Positions 8,676-15,062 of a stretch of DNA of 64,000 bases are shown here, piece after piece; the stretch's first letter is position 1; each line of letters begins with the position of its first letter. Both the position numbers and the translations under genes were made by a program. The stretch is from Octopus sinensis (lineage: Eukaryota), in assembly GCF_006345805.1 (NCBI RefSeq), contig NC_043011.1:64430464-64494463 (forward strand), in the 5' to 3' direction. The notes under the pieces are model-generated. The model was given only the letters and a program-made list of their open reading frames with translations. It did not search any database and was not told where the DNA came from.

Positions 8676-9296
8676 CATTTATTGATAGATAAATATATTG
8701 TTTGACATATATATATGCTTATATATTAATTAATATACATACATATATGTATGTATAAATATATATTTACCAGTGTAAATATCTATCGATCTATGTGCCT
8801 CTCCCTCTCTCTCTCACTCTCAATATATATATATATATAAATATATATATATACACACATACATAAGTATGTAGATATGCGTACACATAAATACATATAT
8901 AATATATATATTCATGTATGTGTATATATATTTATTTATTTATTTACTTTTTACCTATATATACACATAAACACACAATCGCAGACACAAACTCACAATT
9001 TTATATAAATATATATATTTATACACAAATATATATACAATTATATATATATGCATATATACAATGCCTTCGACATCGTAACAGTTACGTATACAATTTC
9101 AACAGACAAAACTGTCATTCTTTAAACATACGTTTACATGTACATACACAGGTACACACGCGCAGACACGTCTACATACATTGAACTTAAAAACATGCAT
9201 ATATGCATACATACATACATGCATGCATACATTCATACTTACATACATATTTATATATACATGCATACAAACATATGTGTATACATACCTACATAA

Positions 9297-9768
9297 ATGA
9301 TGGCTGCCCCTCTTTCGAGTATGGCCATTGCACGAAGCTTAACATTTATTGGTACTGTGATTGAATGTGACTTTTTTGCCCAGCTAAAATATCTATAATG
9401 TCTTGTACAGAATTGGGAACTAAAACATTTACCGGTTATAGCCGTCTGTAGTTGTAGCTGGTCTTCATGTACCTTTGCTTGTTGTTTAAGTCCTCCTGCC
9501 GAATTACACTCTCTTCAGCATGCCCGACAGATATGATTCGTATGGTGTGTTACACCACCACTAGTGACCTTCTTGTCAATCATCTGTCTCGCTTTATGAC
9601 TACGAAGATGACTCTTGAGTCCAGCTTTACTGTGGCAGGGTCTTCCTCAAACACTGCATGTCAGCATCATAGGAAAACCCTTCCTGATATCCCTCCTTAC
9701 TTTCTCATGTGCAACTCGAGATTTCTCAAAGTGGCTGTCCCCTCGTGCACAATCCTTTTCCACCTGCT
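9297..9768 (-). mobile_element. 3' fragment of an RTE/BovB-like LINE with three C-terminal C2H2-type fingers
   Basis: Minus strand gives WKRIVHEG..., CSV*GRPCHSKAGLKSHLRSH, ICRAC*RECNSAGGLKQQAKVH and FSSQFCTRHY...KSHIQSQ. The 3' end GGCCATACTCGAAAGAGGGGCAGCCATCAT resembles RTE tails. Confidence 0.8.
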
Positions 9769-10139
9769 ATACATGCATACATACATTTGCGTAAAAACAT
9801 GTATACACACGTACAAAAATTCTCACGTGCATCGGTAAATGCACACATACATGAGTAGCTGCATGCATTCATATATACGTACGTATGTAATTACCTATAT
9901 AAGCGACATATATATCATGAACTAACTCTTATTTTCTCACATGCAGTACGAAGATTTTTCAGTGTAAATGTTTTGCATTGAAAATGTCTTGACACAAAAT
10001 TTCAGCTTTGAAGTGAAACTAACGTTTTTTGTGAGTTCTTAAATGTCTTACAACCATCTTCCACGTTGCAGTTGTTTTTTTGGGGCATACGATCTTAGAT
10101 CAAGTCACTTCCTATGCAAATACATCTCTCAATATTTAT

Positions 10140-10416
10140 ATATCACCTTGATCACTTTTACCGACCAGTCCGTCAGGCGTCCATTTGACACCACTGGTCG
10201 CAGCACGCTGTCCACTCCTCTATCGATCACGCTTTTCTCATTAACGTGATCCAAATCGTCCTCCTGAAATCGTAACTCCATCGCAGTGGAGGTCTTCCGC
10301 GTGGTTTTTACCGCTCGCGCGGGTACCACTCGTAAACTGCGTGGTCCCACCGATTATCGGTGAGCCGGGCGACGTGTCCAGCAAATCTATATTTGCTGCG
10401 TGTATACTCTGCGATG
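10140..10416 (-). mobile_element. 3' part of an older RTE-type LINE (continues at 14306-15062)
   Basis: AEYTRSKYRFAGHVARLTDNRW...EWYPRER*KPRGRPPLRW is the typical RTE C-terminus, in frame with the 14306-15062 piece once the insert is removed. Confidence 0.92.
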
Positions 10417-10503
10417 GGTCTGCAAAAGTTCAACCCCTCCTCCACTTGGTGCAGATTGGGCAACGCGAGCACAGCAAGCCAGCTGTGCTAGCGGCAAACG
10501 GGG
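10417..10503 (+). ncRNA. HDV-like (nested double-pseudoknot) self-cleaving ribozyme candidate at the LINE 5' end
   Basis: P1 GGUCUGC/GCAGAUU, P2 CCCC/GGGG, P3 (U)CC/GG(U), L3 UCCACUU, J1/4 GGG-CAAC, 12 bp P4, J4/2 GGCAAAC with the putative catalytic C at 10495. Confidence 0.85.
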
Positions 10504-13500
10504 CTCTGACAGACATCAAGTCCTTAACCGTGGAACAGGCGGATGAAGTTGCCTTAACAACTTAACGGCTGTAAAGACGGACGAAGGCTGCAGCAGACCA
10601 TCGACTCCAATCGTCTCGGTTTACCTTTCCATTCGGTCAAGTTGGTGGTCTGTCAAGTTTACGTGTGCTTTACTAGGCATGCGACCTCAAGCACACGTTA
10701 AACAATTTCACGCACATGCGTCTTCGCAACCACTCTTCTTATTCTTTCCAAGTCTTTCGGCGAATGCGTTGGATGACGGGAGCAGGATCGTGAAAGCTAG
10801 AGGCTCCTAGTGCAGAACCGACACGGATGCGGTGGTTACATGATTCAGTCGCTCTATCTTTTGGAAGAAGCAGGGAAGATGTTCGGCAGCAGTATCCACG
10901 ACTGAGCAGCCCTGTTTAGGATCCACTTTGCTCACCCTGAATTGGGAAGGGGCTTAAAAAATATGCCCCAAACAAAGTCTGCTTCACCCCAATCCTGTCT
11001 GGAAAACCGCGTTCAGAGGAATCGCCATCATGCGGTCGAAAGTCAAGATCAAGATCCGCAACGCTGAAATTCGGGACCTGGAATGTCAGGACTCTCATAG
11101 TTAATACCAACTCAGACAAACCCGATAGGCGAACTGCAATCATCGCCCGGGAACTCCATCGATTCAATTTTGACATCGTAGCTCTCAGCGAAACCCAGAG
11201 AGCCGTAGAAGGCCGGATGAGAGAAGAAGGCGATCAATACACCTTTTCTGGAAAGGTTACGATCCCGACCATCAACGGATCCATGGTGTGGGATTTGCAA
11301 TACGAAACACCATCCTATCCAAACTGACAGAGCAGCCCATCGGAATGTCCGCACGACTCATGACCCTCCGAATCCAGCTTGTCAAAAGTCAGCACGCAAC
11401 TATCATCAGCGCGTATGCTCCCACCCTTTACGCGGATGGTTTAGTCAAGGAAGAGCTTTACTGCCAGATTGATAGCATTCTCTCTACCCTCCCAAAGGAT
11501 TACAAGATCATTCTCCTGGGAGATTTCAACGCCAGAGTTGGGAGAGATCGTGAAATCTGGACAGGAACCATCGGAAAGGAAGGAGTGCGAAAAGTCAATG
11601 CCAATGGAACTCTGCTCCTCACCAAATGTGCTGAACGTAACTTGGTGATAACCAACACCCTTTTTCGCCAGAAGAATCGATATAAGGTCTCATGGTAGCA
11701 TCCAAGATCTAAACATTGGCATCTCATTGACTATATCATCGTGAGATCCCGAGACCAGCAAGATGTGTTGCTCACCAGAGCCGCCACTGGAGCAGATGAG
11801 TGCTGGGCAGATCATCGCCTCATTGCCTCCACCACGAAAATCAAACTCCGACCAAAAGTCAAATATCACAGCAAGGAAAGCAGAGTAAAGAAATTCAACA
11901 TCGAAGCACTGCAAGACCCAAAAGCTCGTGTCGCTTTCCAGCTGCGCCTACAGTTCAATCTTCAAAATAAGACTCCAAATCATCTCGTCGAAGAAAATTG
12001 GAGCCATCTGAAAGAAACCATCATCACCGCTTGCGAAGAAACCATCGGTCGCAAGAAAAGGAAACACCCGGACTGGTTCGACGACAATGATGAAACTCTC
12101 AAAGAACTGATCGACCAAAAACGGAAAGCTTTCATCAGCTCACAGCATGATCCAAAGTCTGCCACTAAACGAGAGTCTTTCAAAAAGTGCAAAGCCGCAG
12201 TTCAAAAGACAACCCGTACCCTGAAGAACCAGTGGTGGGGACACAAATCTCGTGAAATCCAGCAGCTAGCAGATGTAAACGACACCAGAGTGTTCTTCAA
12301 AGCCACGAAAGAGATATACGGACCTTCCACACGTGGACAGGCTCCTCTGAAGAGTAAAGAGGGAGCGACCATCCTGATACGCAACACCGAAATAGGAGAC
12401 AGATGGAGAGAACACTTCGATGACCTCCTCAGTCACAAGGCTACCATCGACAAAAGCATACATGACATGATTCCTAAAGAGGCCAAAGATAACTCTCAAG
12501 CTCGAATTCCATCCCTCGAAGAGGTCAAAATTGCTATCACAGCGATGAAGAACAATAAAGCCGCGGGTCCTGAGGGAATCCCAGCTGAGATCTACAAACT
12601 GGGAGGTGATTTTGTGCAACACCAGCTCCACCAAATCTTGGTCAAAATCTGGACAAATCAAGTTGTACCATCCGACTTCAGGGATGCTAACATCATTACC
12701 ATTTACAAACGAAAGGGCGATCGTTCTAAGTGTGGAAATTACCGGGGTATTTTCTTATTAGCAACTGCTGGGAAGATTTTTGCACGCATCCTGAACAACC
12801 GCCTCAAAACGTTGTTAGAGAGGATCCTTCCTGAGACGCAGACCGGCTTTAGGCCATAACGAAGCACAACCGACATGATCTTCATGCTGCGACAGCTACA
12901 AGAAAAATGTTGTGAGCAACACCAACCGCTCTATTTGGCCTTTATCGAGCTATCCAAAGCCTTTGATCGTGTCTCGCGATAACTCCTCTGGGATATTCTC
13001 GTCCAGTATTGATGCCCAGATAAGTTCATCCCGATCCTCAAACTCCTCCACGACAATATGCACGCCAGAGTCCAGACCGACGGAGGCAGTTCTGAGCCCT
13101 TTAAACTCACCTCCGGAGTGAAGCAAGGCTGCGTGATAGCCCCAACTCTTTTACCATCTTTATCGCGACAGTGTTGTACATCATACGTGATAACCTTCCA
13201 CCTGGCATCGAGATCTCGTACAGAATAAACGGCAAGCTTTTCAACCTCGCTCGCCTCAAAAGTACGTCAACGACAATGGCGCTAAGCTTGCTAGAGTCCC
13301 TATATGCCGACGACAACAGTGTAGCAGCTTACAGAAAGGCTCACCTCCAACTGATCCTAAATGCTTTTCATCATGCATATACTAACGTTAGACTGAGCAT
13401 CAACATCAAGAGGACTCACTTACTCTACCAACCTCCTCCCAATTCCCGTGTTGACAACCCGCCATCGATTCAACTCGAAGGAATTCCACTGGAAAATGTG

Positions 13501-14305
13501 AACCATTACTGCTACCTTGGGAGCCATCTGTCAGCAAAGGTAGACCTCAGTGATGAAATCAAACACCGTCTGAAGTGTGCAGGAACAGCTTTCGGCAACC
13601 TTCGAACATGAGTTTTTGCTGATCGGGACATCCGAACAGAAAACAAACGCATAGTGTACAGGGCAGTCATTATTCCAACCCTCCTTTACGCATCCGAAAC
13701 CTGGACCCCGTATAGTCACCACCTTAAAACGCTCGAGAAATGTCATCAACGCTGTATTCGGAAGATCCTTAACATCAGCTGGGAAGACAGAAGAACAAAC
13801 GTCAGCGTGCTACAAGAAGCAAAAATGACCAGCATCGAAGCCTATGTCATCAAAGGCCAACTAAGATGGAGCGGCCACGTGGTTAGAATATCTAAGGAAC
13901 GACTTCCCAAACAGATCTTCTACTCCCAACTCAAAGACGGCAAGCGTACAAAAGGAGACCAGAAGAAACGTTACAAGGACTCCCTGAAACGAACCTCAAA
14001 AAGTGTGACATCGAATTCACTAACTGGGAGGAAACGGCAAAAAACAGACCACTCTGCAAAACCACCATCTATGAAGGAAAAGCGACTTTCGAGTCGAAAA
14101 GGTCTGCAGAGCTGGAGGAGAAAACACGACGACGGAAGGAGCGCCAACAACAAACACGTGCGACTCTCCCTTCTGGCACTAGATGTCCGCACTGCGACTG
14201 ATCTTTTCAAGCAAGAATTGGTCTTATCGGTCACCTACGGACTCACCAGTAAATTTGCGCGAAGACCATCATCCTGGACCTTGTGGGATTGCCATTATCA
14301 TCATC
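10417..14305 (+). mobile_element. Full-length RTE/BovB-like LINE (APE + RT + terminal C2H2), inactivated, 11 bp TSD
   Basis: FGTWNVRTL, SAYAPT, LGDFNARVG and WADHRL (APE); YRGIFLL, GVKQG and YADD (RT); CPHCD...GLIGHLRTH; (CAT)n tail. TSD ACTCTGCGATG at 10406-10416 and 14306-14316. Several stops and frameshifts. Confidence 0.97.
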
Positions 14306-15062
14306 ACTCTGCGATGACATCTCTCACGTCGGATTTCTTTCTGATGATCTCGCTACTGATGTGCTCTCTCAACCAGATACAAAGCATTGAGCTTTCCATG
14401 GCTCTTTGAGACGTTACCAGTCATTGCTCTTCTCTCTTTGTTGTAGCCCATGTTTCACAGCCATATAACATTGCAGGTAAAACTGTACTGTTGATGAGGT
14501 TGGTACGGGTGGTCCTGTCCAGCCTTCCCTTGAACACATCCCTTATGCCATTAAACGCCATCCTTCCGGCCCTTACTCTCCGTGAGATCTTCTTGTCGAT
14601 ATCTCAGCACATATTCACTTCTTGTCCCAGGTAGACATATTATTTTACATCCTCTATTTCTTCACTACCGATCAAAATTCGCTCTGTTGGTACGTTGTCT
14701 AACCGCATGAACTTTGTTTTCATGCGGTTCATCTTGAGACCTACTGCAAAGCTTTTGATGTCGAGCTCTGTAAGCATGGTCTGAAGCTGATTCGTGTTTT
14801 CAGCGATGAGTACGATGTCGTCAGCGAAACGGAGATGGGTGAGGAGCTCGCCATTGATGTTGACACCGCCTTGCCAGTCTATGCCTCTGATGATCTGCTC
14901 GAGACATGCGGTGAAAAGTTTTGGGGAGATTGTATCTCATCTCTCGTACGGCACTAGTATGGGTGATGACAGTAGAGCTATGTCGGTGGTGCATCGAGAA
15001 TTCGCTTCCCTGAGCAGCTGCGCATATTGCTCTTCGACTCCTTGCCTCCGCAATGCAGAGGC
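14306..15062 (-). mobile_element. 5' part of the older RTE-type LINE (RT C-terminal half)
   Basis: DTISPKLFTACLE, HLRFADDIVL, VGLKMN, YVYLGQ and LPAMLYGCETW on the minus strand. Confidence 0.92.

What the first reader, a model, noticed from the sequence alone, without database searches (positions are those of the whole stretch)
10417..10503. HDV-like ribozyme fold beginning exactly at the first base of a full-length RTE LINE
Seen: immediately after the TSD the element starts GGTCTGC. P1 is GGUCUGC/GCAGAUU (10417-23/10451-57) with a G1-U wobble. P2 is CCCC/GGGG (10434-37/10500-03). P3 is UCC/GGU with one U-U mismatch, and L3 is UCCACUU, whose CC can pair with GG of J1/4 (P1.1). Then come GGG-CAAC, a 12 bp P4 with one mismatch (CGCGAGCACAGC/GCUGUGCUAGCG) and J4/2 GGCAAAC. 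This parallels the genomic HDV ribozyme (GGG CAAC...GGC GAAU GGGAC) almost base for base. Established: HDV-like ribozymes process the 5' ends of R2 and RTE retrotransposon RNAs. Inference: this family defines its 5' end by self-cleavage from host read-through transcripts. I do not know whether it has been described in cephalopods.
Basis: partly seen in the sequence, partly recalled or inferred. Interest (0 to 1): 0.85.

Follow-up and report, generated by a model that had tools for sequence, protein, structure and literature searches.

The report
HDV-like ribozyme heading octopus RTE
The first 87 bases of this dead RTE-type jumping gene copy a hepatitis-delta-like self-cutting RNA that trims the element's own 5' end; this device is already known from RTE elements of other animals, is well supported here in an octopus genome, and this copy has lost one key base.

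Summary
Window 10417-10503 can be drawn as a complete HDV-type double pseudoknot (P1, P1.1, P2, P3, P4 and a J4/2 cytosine at 10495). G1 is the first base of a 3,889-bp APE+RT element (10417-14305) flanked by an 11-bp target-site duplication.

Rfam's HDV model matches it over its full length but below threshold (36.5 bits against 50). Genome-wide, the eight best hits to that model are all 5' ends of this family.

Thirteen independent copies start exactly at G1. A 375-bp non-autonomous retroposon family shares only the ribozyme core strands, and it also starts at G1. Its P1 has a different sequence that still pairs. All seven P1 pairs and one P1.1 pair change on both sides between families.

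So the family-level reading, 5'-end definition by self-cleavage, is well supported, but cleavage is untested.

Caveats:
- The ORF is broken.
- The window copy has T at 10446, where all families keep the L3 guanine (HDV G25 equivalent), so this copy is probably impaired.
- The P3 U-U mismatch is the conserved state, not damage.

This is a new member of a known kind. I found no cephalopod report. This scan has already noted similar RTE ribozymes on other DNA of this genome.

The parts
10406..10416 (+). Left target-site duplication, ACTCTGCGATG
   Evidence: Exact 11-bp repeat of 14306-14316. An empty-site contig joins 10416 to the sequence at 14317.
10417..14305 (+). RTE-type LINE copy, 3,889 bp. 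It is complete in extent, but its ORF is broken by several stops and at least two frameshifts.
   Evidence: The 5' boundary is shared by 13 copies. The 3' boundary is shared by more than 30 copies. Pfam finds APE and RT.
10417..10503 (+). HDV-like ribozyme fold (G1 to the end of P2)
   Evidence: RF00094 full-model match at 36.5 bits. Own model R1 scores 122.7 bits. Pair table.
10417..10423 (+). P1 5' strand, GGUCUGC. The predicted cleavage is 5' of G10417.
   Evidence: Pairs with 10451-57. All 7 pairs covary between families.
10434..10437 (+). P2 5' strand, CCCC
   Evidence: Pairs with GGGG at 10500-03. Invariant in families 1 and 3. Family 2 has a different complementary P2.
10438..10440 (+). 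P3 5' strand, UCC
   Evidence: Pairs with GGU at 10448-50 as U-U, C-G, C-G. The mismatch is conserved in families 1 and 3.
10441..10447 (+). L3, UCCACUU. C10442 and C10443 form P1.1. T10446 replaces the conserved L3 guanine.
   Evidence: Other copies read UCCACGG, UCCACGU or UCCACGA. G is kept at this position in families 1, 2, 3a and 3b. The descriptor hits this copy only if the G requirement is dropped.
10448..10450 (+). P3 3' strand, GGU
10451..10457 (+). P1 3' strand, GCAGAUU. T10456 is C in most copies.
10458..10463 (+). J1/4, GGGCAA. G10458 and G10459 are the P1.1 partners.
   Evidence: Identical to the HDV model consensus GGGCAAC. The P1.1 pair is C-G in families 1 and 2 and A-U in family 3.
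10464..10493 (+). P4 hairpin: 12 bp with one G.A mismatch and loop AAGCCA
   Evidence: The pair G-C becomes G.U and then A-U in a subfamily that also has a 5-nt shortening.
10494..10499 (+). J4/2, GCAAAC, with the candidate catalytic cytosine C10495
   Evidence: GGCAAAC is kept in 14 of 16 copies. Family 3a has GGCAGAC and family 2 has GGCUAA.
10500..10503 (+). P2 3' strand, GGGG
11402..11672 (+). Remnant of the apurinic/apyrimidinic-type endonuclease domain
   Evidence: PF14529, E 5e-5. 498 homologues were found, and the best informative name among them is 'craniofacial development protein 2'.
12713..12856 (+). Start of the reverse-transcriptase domain. It continues in other frames up to the YADD motif.
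   Evidence: PF00078. The frame-1 translation contains YADD.
14294..14305 (+). 3' tail, ATTATCATCATC (short ATC repeat)
   Evidence: Homology among copies ends here.
14306..14316 (+). Right target-site duplication

Best explanation
Window 10417-10503 is the 5' head of an RTE-type LINE family. The head encodes an HDV-like self-cleaving ribozyme.

Inferred mechanism: the element has no need of its own promoter. It is transcribed as part of longer host or neighbouring transcripts. The nascent RNA folds into the nested double pseudoknot. The J4/2 cytosine (C10495 here), together with a metal ion held by the L3 U.G reverse wobble, cuts the chain just 5' of G1. This releases element RNA whose first base is G1, so full-length cDNA copies start exactly there.

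Shown here:
- the fold;
- its covariation between families;
- its conservation as the only shared sequence between a LINE and a non-autonomous retroposon;
- the coincidence of G1 with the element boundary.

Inferred, not shown: cleavage, read-through transcription, and any role in translation.

The window copy is a decayed insertion. Its ORF is broken and the conserved L3 guanine is replaced by T at 10446, so this copy is probably a weak or inactive ribozyme.
For: - Rfam: the full-length RF00094 match puts G1 at 10417. The eight best genome-wide RF00094 hits are all this family.
- Boundary: an 11-bp TSD plus an empty-site contig fix the insert at 10417-14305.
- Copies: 13 independent copies start at G1 with unrelated flanks, and others start within 1-4 nt. 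There were 27 candidates for the 5' end against 1,312 for the 3' part, the usual LINE 5'-truncation pattern.
- Family 3a: a roughly 375-bp retroposon with TSDs that also starts at G1. It had at least 1,195 first-look candidates, and the 40 that were scored are 95-98% identical to the query. It shares with the RTE only nt 9-35 and the J4/2-P2' strand.
- P1 sequences: GGUCUGC/GCAGACU in family 1, GCGUCCCC/GGGGACGC in 3a, CUACCCU/AGGGUGG in 3b, and GGUCCAC/GUGGACU in family 2.
- Pair counts: 364 of 381 cells are standard pairs, against 30-48% when the partners are slid. All 7 P1 pairs and P1.1 pair 27-44 (C-G to A-U) change on both sides.
- P4: the pair moves from G-C through G.U to A-U across subfamilies.
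- Literature: RTE ribozymes cleave at the element's 5' junction. P1 covaries while the P1.1/P3/L3 region stays constant in R2 ribozymes. An active Nasonia R2 ribozyme has a P3 mismatch. Changing the L3 G to A abolished its cleavage (PMC3774820; PMC6765202).
Against: - No cleavage assay was possible, and no RNA 5'-end data were available. Only assembled contigs could be laid, and they run through the junction of another copy.
- The Rfam gathering score is not reached (36.5 bits here, best copy 43.1, threshold 50).
- P3 has only two Watson-Crick pairs plus a conserved U-U mismatch.
- P2 and P3 are invariant between families 1 and 3, so they carry no covariation.
- The MFE z-score is weak (-1.0 for this copy, -2.5 for L006).
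- The covariation rests on about four lineages, and the alignment used was fitted to the model.
- Two of 12 family 3a copies lack J4/2 and P2' yet start at G1. The breakpoints differ, so they are most simply later deletions.
Confidence: 0.82

Rival explanations
1. The head is a conserved, structured 5' leader without catalysis, for example a binding site for the element's protein or an IRES-like fold. On this reading the precise 5' ends come from an internal promoter that starts transcription at base 1.
For: Precise 5' ends alone are also produced by internal promoters (noted in PMC3774820). No cleavage data exist. P3 is weak, and the Rfam score is below threshold.
Against: A leader or promoter does not predict any of the following: a helix whose 5' strand is the first 7-8 bases and covaries in four lineages; a covarying 2-bp P1.1; a conserved J4/2 cytosine; an L3 U...G; or near-identity of J1/4 and L3 to the HDV core. 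The genome-wide top hits of the HDV model fall on this family.
Confidence: 0.1
2. The window copy itself is still an efficient ribozyme, as the reader's proposed assay on 10380-10510 assumes.
For: P1 (with two wobbles), P1.1, P2, P4 and C10495 are all intact in this copy. In HDV itself, substituting the L3 guanine does not completely abolish cleavage (PMC3774820).
Against: T10446 replaces the L3 guanine. That guanine is kept in all four families and in 14 of 16 family copies. The equivalent G-to-A change abolished cleavage of the Nasonia R2 ribozyme, and an inactive sow-bug R2 lacks this G (PMC3774820). The copy is otherwise decayed.
Confidence: 0.2
3. The match to the HDV fold in a GC-rich LINE leader is a chance resemblance.
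For: The hit is below the Rfam threshold. A loose descriptor finds about 7 start sites per 128 kb of shuffled sequence.
Against: The start coincides to the base with the element boundary in separate families (about 6e-5 per position each). The helices covary. The family ranks top genome-wide for the HDV model.
Confidence: 0.01

Closest known systems
[quoted passage not shown] 2011, J Biol Chem 286:41286; known to me through PMC3774820 and PMC6765202; the paper itself was not held)
   Same: The element clade, the position (cleavage site equals the first base of the element) and the fold are the same. The proposed role is also the same: release from read-through transcripts of a LINE that lacks a promoter.
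   Different: The host is a cephalopod; a full-text search found no report in that group. The core is unusually close to genomic HDV (J1/4 GGGCAAC, L3 UCCNCG). P3 carries a conserved U-U mismatch. No activity data exist.
R2 retrotransposon ribozymes (Eickbush and Eickbush; PMC3774820)
   Same: Both are double pseudoknots in which P1 covaries while the P1.1/P3/L3 region stays constant. P4 varies from absent to long. Both show 5'-junction variation of a few bases, a P3 mismatch tolerated in an active member (Nasonia), and loss of activity in dead copies through L3 mutations.
   Different: R2 is site-specific in 28S rDNA and uses a restriction-like endonuclease, and it often cleaves upstream within 28S. 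This element is APE-type, dispersed, and predicted to cleave at its own first base.
L1Tc and its non-autonomous partner NARTc in Trypanosoma cruzi, and R2 SIDEs (PMC6765202)
   Same: In each case an autonomous LINE and a short non-coding retroposon carry the same kind of HDV-like ribozyme head. Here the pair is the RTE family and the 375-bp family 3a.
   Different: Here the short element does not share the 3' tail of this RTE family ((ACAAGT)n against (ATC)n). Its autonomous partner is therefore another LINE that I did not identify.
Genomic HDV ribozyme (Rfam RF00094)
   Same: The topology and many core bases are the same: G1.U wobble, L3 UCC.CG, GGGCAAC, GGC.AA.
   Different: The match is below the family's gathering score. 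P2 is 4 bp, P3 is mismatched, and the biological context is a retrotransposon rather than a circular RNA replicon. The shared core is most simply convergence or ancient sharing, as discussed for R2 in PMC3774820.

Membership tests
HDV-like self-cleaving ribozymes | Nested double pseudoknot: P1 and P2 cross, P3 lies inside P1, P1.1 joins L3 to J1/4, and P4 (optional) lies between J1/4 and J4/2. | tested here: met
   All helices can be drawn at 10417-10503 and in copies of families 1, 2, 3a and 3b. Descriptor hits begin at the first base.
HDV-like self-cleaving ribozymes | Base pairing supported by compensatory changes | tested here: met
   All 7 P1 pairs and P1.1 pair 27-44 change on both sides between families. 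95.5% of cells are paired, against 30-48% in slid controls. P4 moves from G-C through G.U to A-U. P2 and P3 are invariant within families 1 and 3, so they give no information. The alignment was fitted to the model.
HDV-like self-cleaving ribozymes | Catalytic cytosine in J4/2 | tested here: met
   C10495 lies in GGCAAAC, which is kept in 14 of 16 copies. Family 3a has GGCAGAC and family 2 has GGCUAA.
HDV-like self-cleaving ribozymes | L3 with a 5' U and a conserved G (reverse wobble) plus the P1.1 cytosines | tested here: not met
   The family as a whole meets this feature (UCCACGG; G kept in all four families). The window copy does not: it has T at 10446 (UCCACUU). The importance of this G is described in PMC3774820.
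HDV-like self-cleaving ribozymes | P3 of three base pairs | tested here: inconclusive
   There are two C-G pairs plus a U-U mismatch that is conserved in families 1 and 3. Family 2 has A-U, C-G and A.G. An active Nasonia R2 ribozyme also has a P3 mismatch (PMC3774820).
HDV-like self-cleaving ribozymes | Rfam RF00094 gathering score (50 bits) | tested here: not met
   The window copy scores 36.5 bits and the best copy 43.1 bits. The model omits both pseudoknots.
HDV-like self-cleaving ribozymes | Mg2+-dependent self-scission 5' of G1, giving 5'-OH and 2',3'-cyclic phosphate ends | not testable with these tools
   No raw RNA reads were on offer, and contigs cannot show RNA ends.
RTE-clade LINE | A single ORF with an N-terminal APE endonuclease followed by RT, a short element of 3-4 kb, and a short tandem-repeat 3' tail | tested here: met
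   PF14529 then PF00078. Length 3,889 bp with an (ATC)n tail. These features are comparable to RTE-2_OV (PMC9115989).
RTE-clade LINE | Phylogenetic placement of the RT within the RTE clade | not tested
   There is only an indirect hint. The APE fragment is 63% identical to a protein named 'craniofacial development protein 2', a name that to my knowledge is given to BovB/RTE-derived sequences.

The most novel reading that the evidence does not exclude
The same catalytic module heads both RTE LINEs and an abundant, young, promoter-less 375-bp retroposon family (at least about 1,200 candidates, 95-98% identical). A related motif also sits inside a further repeat of at least 1.9 kb. If these all cleave, a sizeable part of the octopus's many 'unclassified SINEs' would be ribozyme-processed passengers of read-through transcripts, not Pol III SINEs. 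The reported RTE expression in octopus neurons would then largely track the host transcription units that contain the elements.
Probability: 0.45. Interest if true: 0.6.

Novelty: new member of a known kind. Interest (0 to 1): 0.45.

Why it matters
RTE LINEs are the elements reported as transcribed, and possibly mobile, in octopus brain (PMC9115989). Recent repeat annotations list many active RTE families and about 900 unclassified SINE families (PMC13282606). Neither paper mentions a ribozyme.

A ribozyme head implies three things:
- These elements need no promoter of their own.
- Their RNA level depends on where copies sit in host transcription units.
- Their processed RNAs are uncapped and carry 5'-OH ends, which standard 5'-end methods miss.

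The finding also gives a simple sequence signature for classifying ribozyme-headed non-autonomous retroposons in cephalopod genomes, and it adds natural variants of the HDV fold: a conserved U-U in P3 and an A-U pair in P1.1.

Tried and rejected
- **RNA evidence.** One run search gave only Logan contigs, none on record as RNA. Laying four of them showed no ends. A contig of another family copy reads through the 5' junction from a different flank, which says nothing about cleavage.
- **Rfam at gathering thresholds.** Nothing in the window. The mir-297-like and other microRNA hits at 9000-9900 are TG/TA microsatellite artefacts.
- **MFE folding.** z = -1.0 for this copy and 0.16 for the SINE head, as expected for pseudoknots and so not informative. 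The nested MFE of the intact copy pairs CCCC with the local G30-G33. That alternative is not conserved in family 3, so I rejected it in favour of the distal P2.
- **Rfam's own P3 register** (ACC/GGU with a 12-nt L3). I rejected it because it leaves no P2, and A17 is U in family 3a.
- **Metagenome pattern scan** for the core. It gave one chance match in an unrelated contig with no P1.
- **tRNA search** of the SINE-like family. None found.
- **Protein or DNA similarity** between the SINE and the RTE beyond the core. None.
- **Missing papers.** Ruminski 2011 and Webb 2009 are not held.
- **First descriptor.** It missed family 1 because of the G.A mismatch in P4 and was relaxed.
- **Pair counting.** I used my own script on alignment A4 instead of the count of structure pairs, to avoid typing a long structure string.
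- **No reconstruction.** I built no full-length consensus and no repaired ORF of the element.

Full report
**1. Observation**

- P1 is GGUCUGC (10417-23) with GCAGAUU (10451-57).
- P2 is CCCC (10434-37) with GGGG (10500-03).
- P3 is UCC (10438-40) with GGU (10448-50), with a U-U mismatch.
- L3 is UCCACUU. Its two cytosines face G10458 and G10459 of J1/4 (GGGCAAC) to form P1.1.
- P4 is a 12-bp hairpin (10464-93) with one G.A mismatch.
- J4/2 is G-C-AAAC, with the candidate catalytic cytosine at 10495.

Rfam's HDV ribozyme model (RF00094) aligns 10415-10507 over all 89 model positions, with model G1 on 10417. The score is 36.5 bits, E = 0.014 for 7 kb and 4,227 families, below the gathering score of 50. 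Nothing in the window reaches a gathering score.

**2. The element**

An exact 11-bp repeat, ACTCTGCGATG, lies at 10406-16 and 14306-16.

Homology with more than 30 other genomic copies ends at about 14295-14307, just after a short ATC repeat.

A public contig of the repeat into which the element inserted runs from 10416 directly into the sequence found at 14317 (X1 record 5). The insert is therefore 10417-14305, or 3,889 bp.

It encodes an APE-type endonuclease (PF14529) followed by a reverse transcriptase (PF00078, with a YADD motif). The coding region is spread over three frames and has several in-frame stops. It is full-length in extent but dead.

The endonuclease fragment has hundreds of homologues. 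Among the few that carry a name is 'craniofacial development protein 2' at 63% identity. To my knowledge that name is attached to BovB/RTE-derived sequences.

The architecture, size and microsatellite tail fit the RTE clade and resemble the octopus element RTE-2_OV (PMC9115989). I did not make an RT phylogeny.

**3. Copies in the genome**

The window is G000:C15:64430464-64494463 of a 2.72-Gb assembly. Earlier notes of this scan call the organism Octopus sinensis; I did not verify that.

The first 204 bases have about 27 candidate matches, against 1,312 for the 3' 1.5 kb. This is the usual 5'-truncation pattern of LINEs.

When 100 bases of upstream flank are added to the query, homology in other copies begins at query position 101, which is 10417. 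Thirteen independent loci read GGTCTGC directly after unrelated flanks. Seven more differ only in the first 1-4 bases. L001 is a duplicate of the window locus on an unplaced contig.

A search of the whole genome with RF00094 returned copies of this 5' end as its eight best hits (best 43.1 bits, E 0.07 for the genome).

**4. State of the ribozyme in the family and in this copy**

Most copies read P1 GGUCUGC/GCAGACU, that is G1.U plus six Watson-Crick pairs. Their L3 is UCCACGG and their J4/2 is GGCAAAC.

The window copy differs at two places:
- C-to-T at 10456, giving G2.U. This is harmless on paper.
- GG-to-TT at 10446-47.

Position 10446 is the sixth base of L3. It is G in 14 of 16 family copies, in all three other families described below, and in HDV.

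[quoted passage not shown] A G-to-A change there abolished cleavage of the Nasonia R2 ribozyme. An inactive sow-bug R2 lacks it. In HDV itself the substitution does not abolish cleavage completely.

I therefore expect the window copy to be weak or inactive.

The U-U mismatch in P3 is invariant in families 1 and 3, so it is the native state and not damage. The same paper notes a P3 mismatch in an active ribozyme.

**5. Related families and covariation**

I built a covariance model from 17 family copies (A1 and R1) and searched the genome with it. This found further families.

*Family 3a*
- It is a roughly 375-bp non-coding retroposon with target-site duplications (L092 has CCTTTATAATAT on both sides) and an (ACAAGT)n tail.
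- Its 170-nt head has at least 1,195 first-look candidates. The 40 that were scored are 95-98% identical to the query.
- It has no tRNA-like part.
- All twelve sampled copies start at the same base after unrelated flanks.
- The only similarity to the RTE is in nt 9-35 (J1/2, P2, P3, L3) and in the J4/2-P2' strand. These are exactly the core strands of the fold.
- Its P1 is GCGUCCCC/GGGGACGC. Its P4 is a domain of about 100 nt closed by GGG/CCC. Its J4/2 is GGCAGAC, and its P2 is CCCC/GGGG.

*Subfamily 3b* has P1 CUACCCU/AGGGUGG.

*Family 2* has:
- P1 GGUCCAC/GUGGACU
- P2 GAGUUU/AAACUC
- L3 UCCUCGU
- J1/4 GGGCAAC
- J4/2 GGCUAA

*Pair counts on alignment A4* (35 sequences)
- All seven P1 pairs show changes on both sides between families.
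- P1.1 pair 27-44 is C-G in families 1 and 2 and A-U in families 3a and 3b.
- 364 of 381 cells are standard pairs, against 30-48% when the 3' partners are slid by 1-3 columns.

*Within family 1*, a P4 pair moves from G-C through G.U to A-U in a subfamily that has also lost 5 nt of the distal stem.

*Caveats*
- There are only about four lineages.
- A4 was fitted to the model.
- P2 and P3 do not vary between families 1 and 3.

*Descriptor control.* A home-made descriptor of the whole double pseudoknot starts at about 6e-5 of positions in shuffled sequence. It hits natural copies of families 1, 3a, 3b and 2 with its start on the first base of P1. It hits the window copy only when the L3 G requirement is dropped.

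**6. Mechanism**

Established knowledge: HDV-like ribozymes sit at the 5' ends of R2, R4/Dong, L1Tc, Baggins and RTE elements. They cut the element RNA out of co-transcripts at, or near, the 5' junction (PMC3774820; PMC6765202; both cite Ruminski et al. 2011).

The pattern here is the one described for R2: a constant P1.1/P3/L3 core, a covarying P1 and a free P4.

The most likely reading is that this RTE family, and the short family 3a, are transcribed by read-through and cleave themselves 5' of G1. Reverse transcription to the end of that RNA then gives copies that begin at G1.

This is inference. No cleavage assay was possible. No raw RNA reads were available.

The main rival is a non-catalytic structured leader with an internal promoter. 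That reading does not predict the covarying P1 anchored on base 1, the covarying P1.1, the conserved J4/2 cytosine or the HDV-like core.

**7. Novelty**

This is a new member of a known kind. Full-text searches found no report of HDV-like ribozymes in cephalopods. The octopus LINE and repeat papers do not mention ribozymes. The giant-squid genome paper lists only hammerheads.

This scan's own earlier notes already hold 27 entries on HDV-like ribozymes at RTE starts elsewhere in this genome. One of them (s1-108647) describes an 87-base head of a decayed RTE and may be another copy of this family. Those notes are unchecked and did not enter my scoring.

**8.
- C10495U is the right catalytic control.
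- The wild-type construct 10380-10510 is a poor positive control because of T10446. A natural intact copy such as L006:1441-1600 should be used beside it.
- T10438A is worth testing as a question about the conserved U-U, not as a repair.

Noticed in passing
L089:1214-1593 (-), L091-L100, L104, L105 (e.g. G000:C8:80841078-80841457): Family 3a is a roughly 375-bp non-coding retroposon with TSDs and an (ACAAGT)n tail. Its first ~157 nt are an HDV-like fold with a ~100-nt P4, and it has no tRNA-like part. The head has at least 1,195 candidate copies, and the 40 scored are 95-98% identical to the query. It looks like a ribozyme-headed SINE-like element whose LINE partner is not this RTE family.
   Followed up: partly
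L101-L103 (G000:C6:42322654, C3:18761301, C3:119448212): Subfamily 3b has a fully different but complementary P1 (CUACCCU/AGGGUGG), L3 UCAAAGU and J1/4 UGUAAAC. P1 starts with C rather than G. Whether it is active is doubtful.
   Followed up: partly
L038-L054 (e.g. L041:1598-1684 +, G000:C5:40579473): Family 2 is a well-formed HDV-like motif (P1 GGUCCAC/GUGGACU, P2 GAGUUU/AAACUC, GGGCAAC, GGCUAA). It lies inside a repeat of at least 1.9 kb, with about 1 kb of homology upstream of G1, in roughly 15-20 copies that are 70-87% identical. It is not at an element boundary. Rfam gives only 27-33 bits.
   Followed up: partly
L093:301-500 (+) and L100:301-500 (+): Two of 12 family 3a copies have lost 14-15 nt covering J4/2 and the P2 3' strand, with different breakpoints between short GG repeats. 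They nevertheless start at G1. These are probably later deletions.
   Followed up: partly
G000:C10:698693-699048, C28:14805401-14805757, C29:6726660-6727218; L028 (C4:138471514-138471621): Some loci carry head-to-tail duplicated ribozyme heads: a partial head (to about nt 100-187) followed directly by a new G1. This occurs in family 3a and once in family 1. It may reflect template switching at the RNA 5' end, or uncleaved tandem transcripts.
   Followed up: no
window 10137-10416 and 14317 onward: The RTE sits inside another high-copy repeat, and many contigs of four public runs lie on 10137-10416 at 88-95% identity. The left TSD contains TCTGC, the same five bases as nt 3-7 of the element.
   Followed up: partly
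window 9000-9930: There are many sub-threshold microRNA-family hits (mir-297, mir-466, mir-3149 and others) on both strands. They fall on TG/TA-rich simple repeats and look like artefacts.
   Followed up: no
L001 (G000:C11551:21644-24847): An unplaced contig carries a near-identical copy (99.7-100%) of the window locus including its flanks. It is probably a haplotig or an assembly duplicate.
   Followed up: no
L088 (G000:C9:98909504-98909598, -) and L090 (G000:C16:44365424-44365500, -): These are old, decayed relatives of the family-1 head. L088 keeps a P4 with different but complementary bases (UAUGGC/GCCAUA against CACAGC/GCUGUG). L090 has an A-U pair where family 1 has G6-C36.
   Followed up: partly
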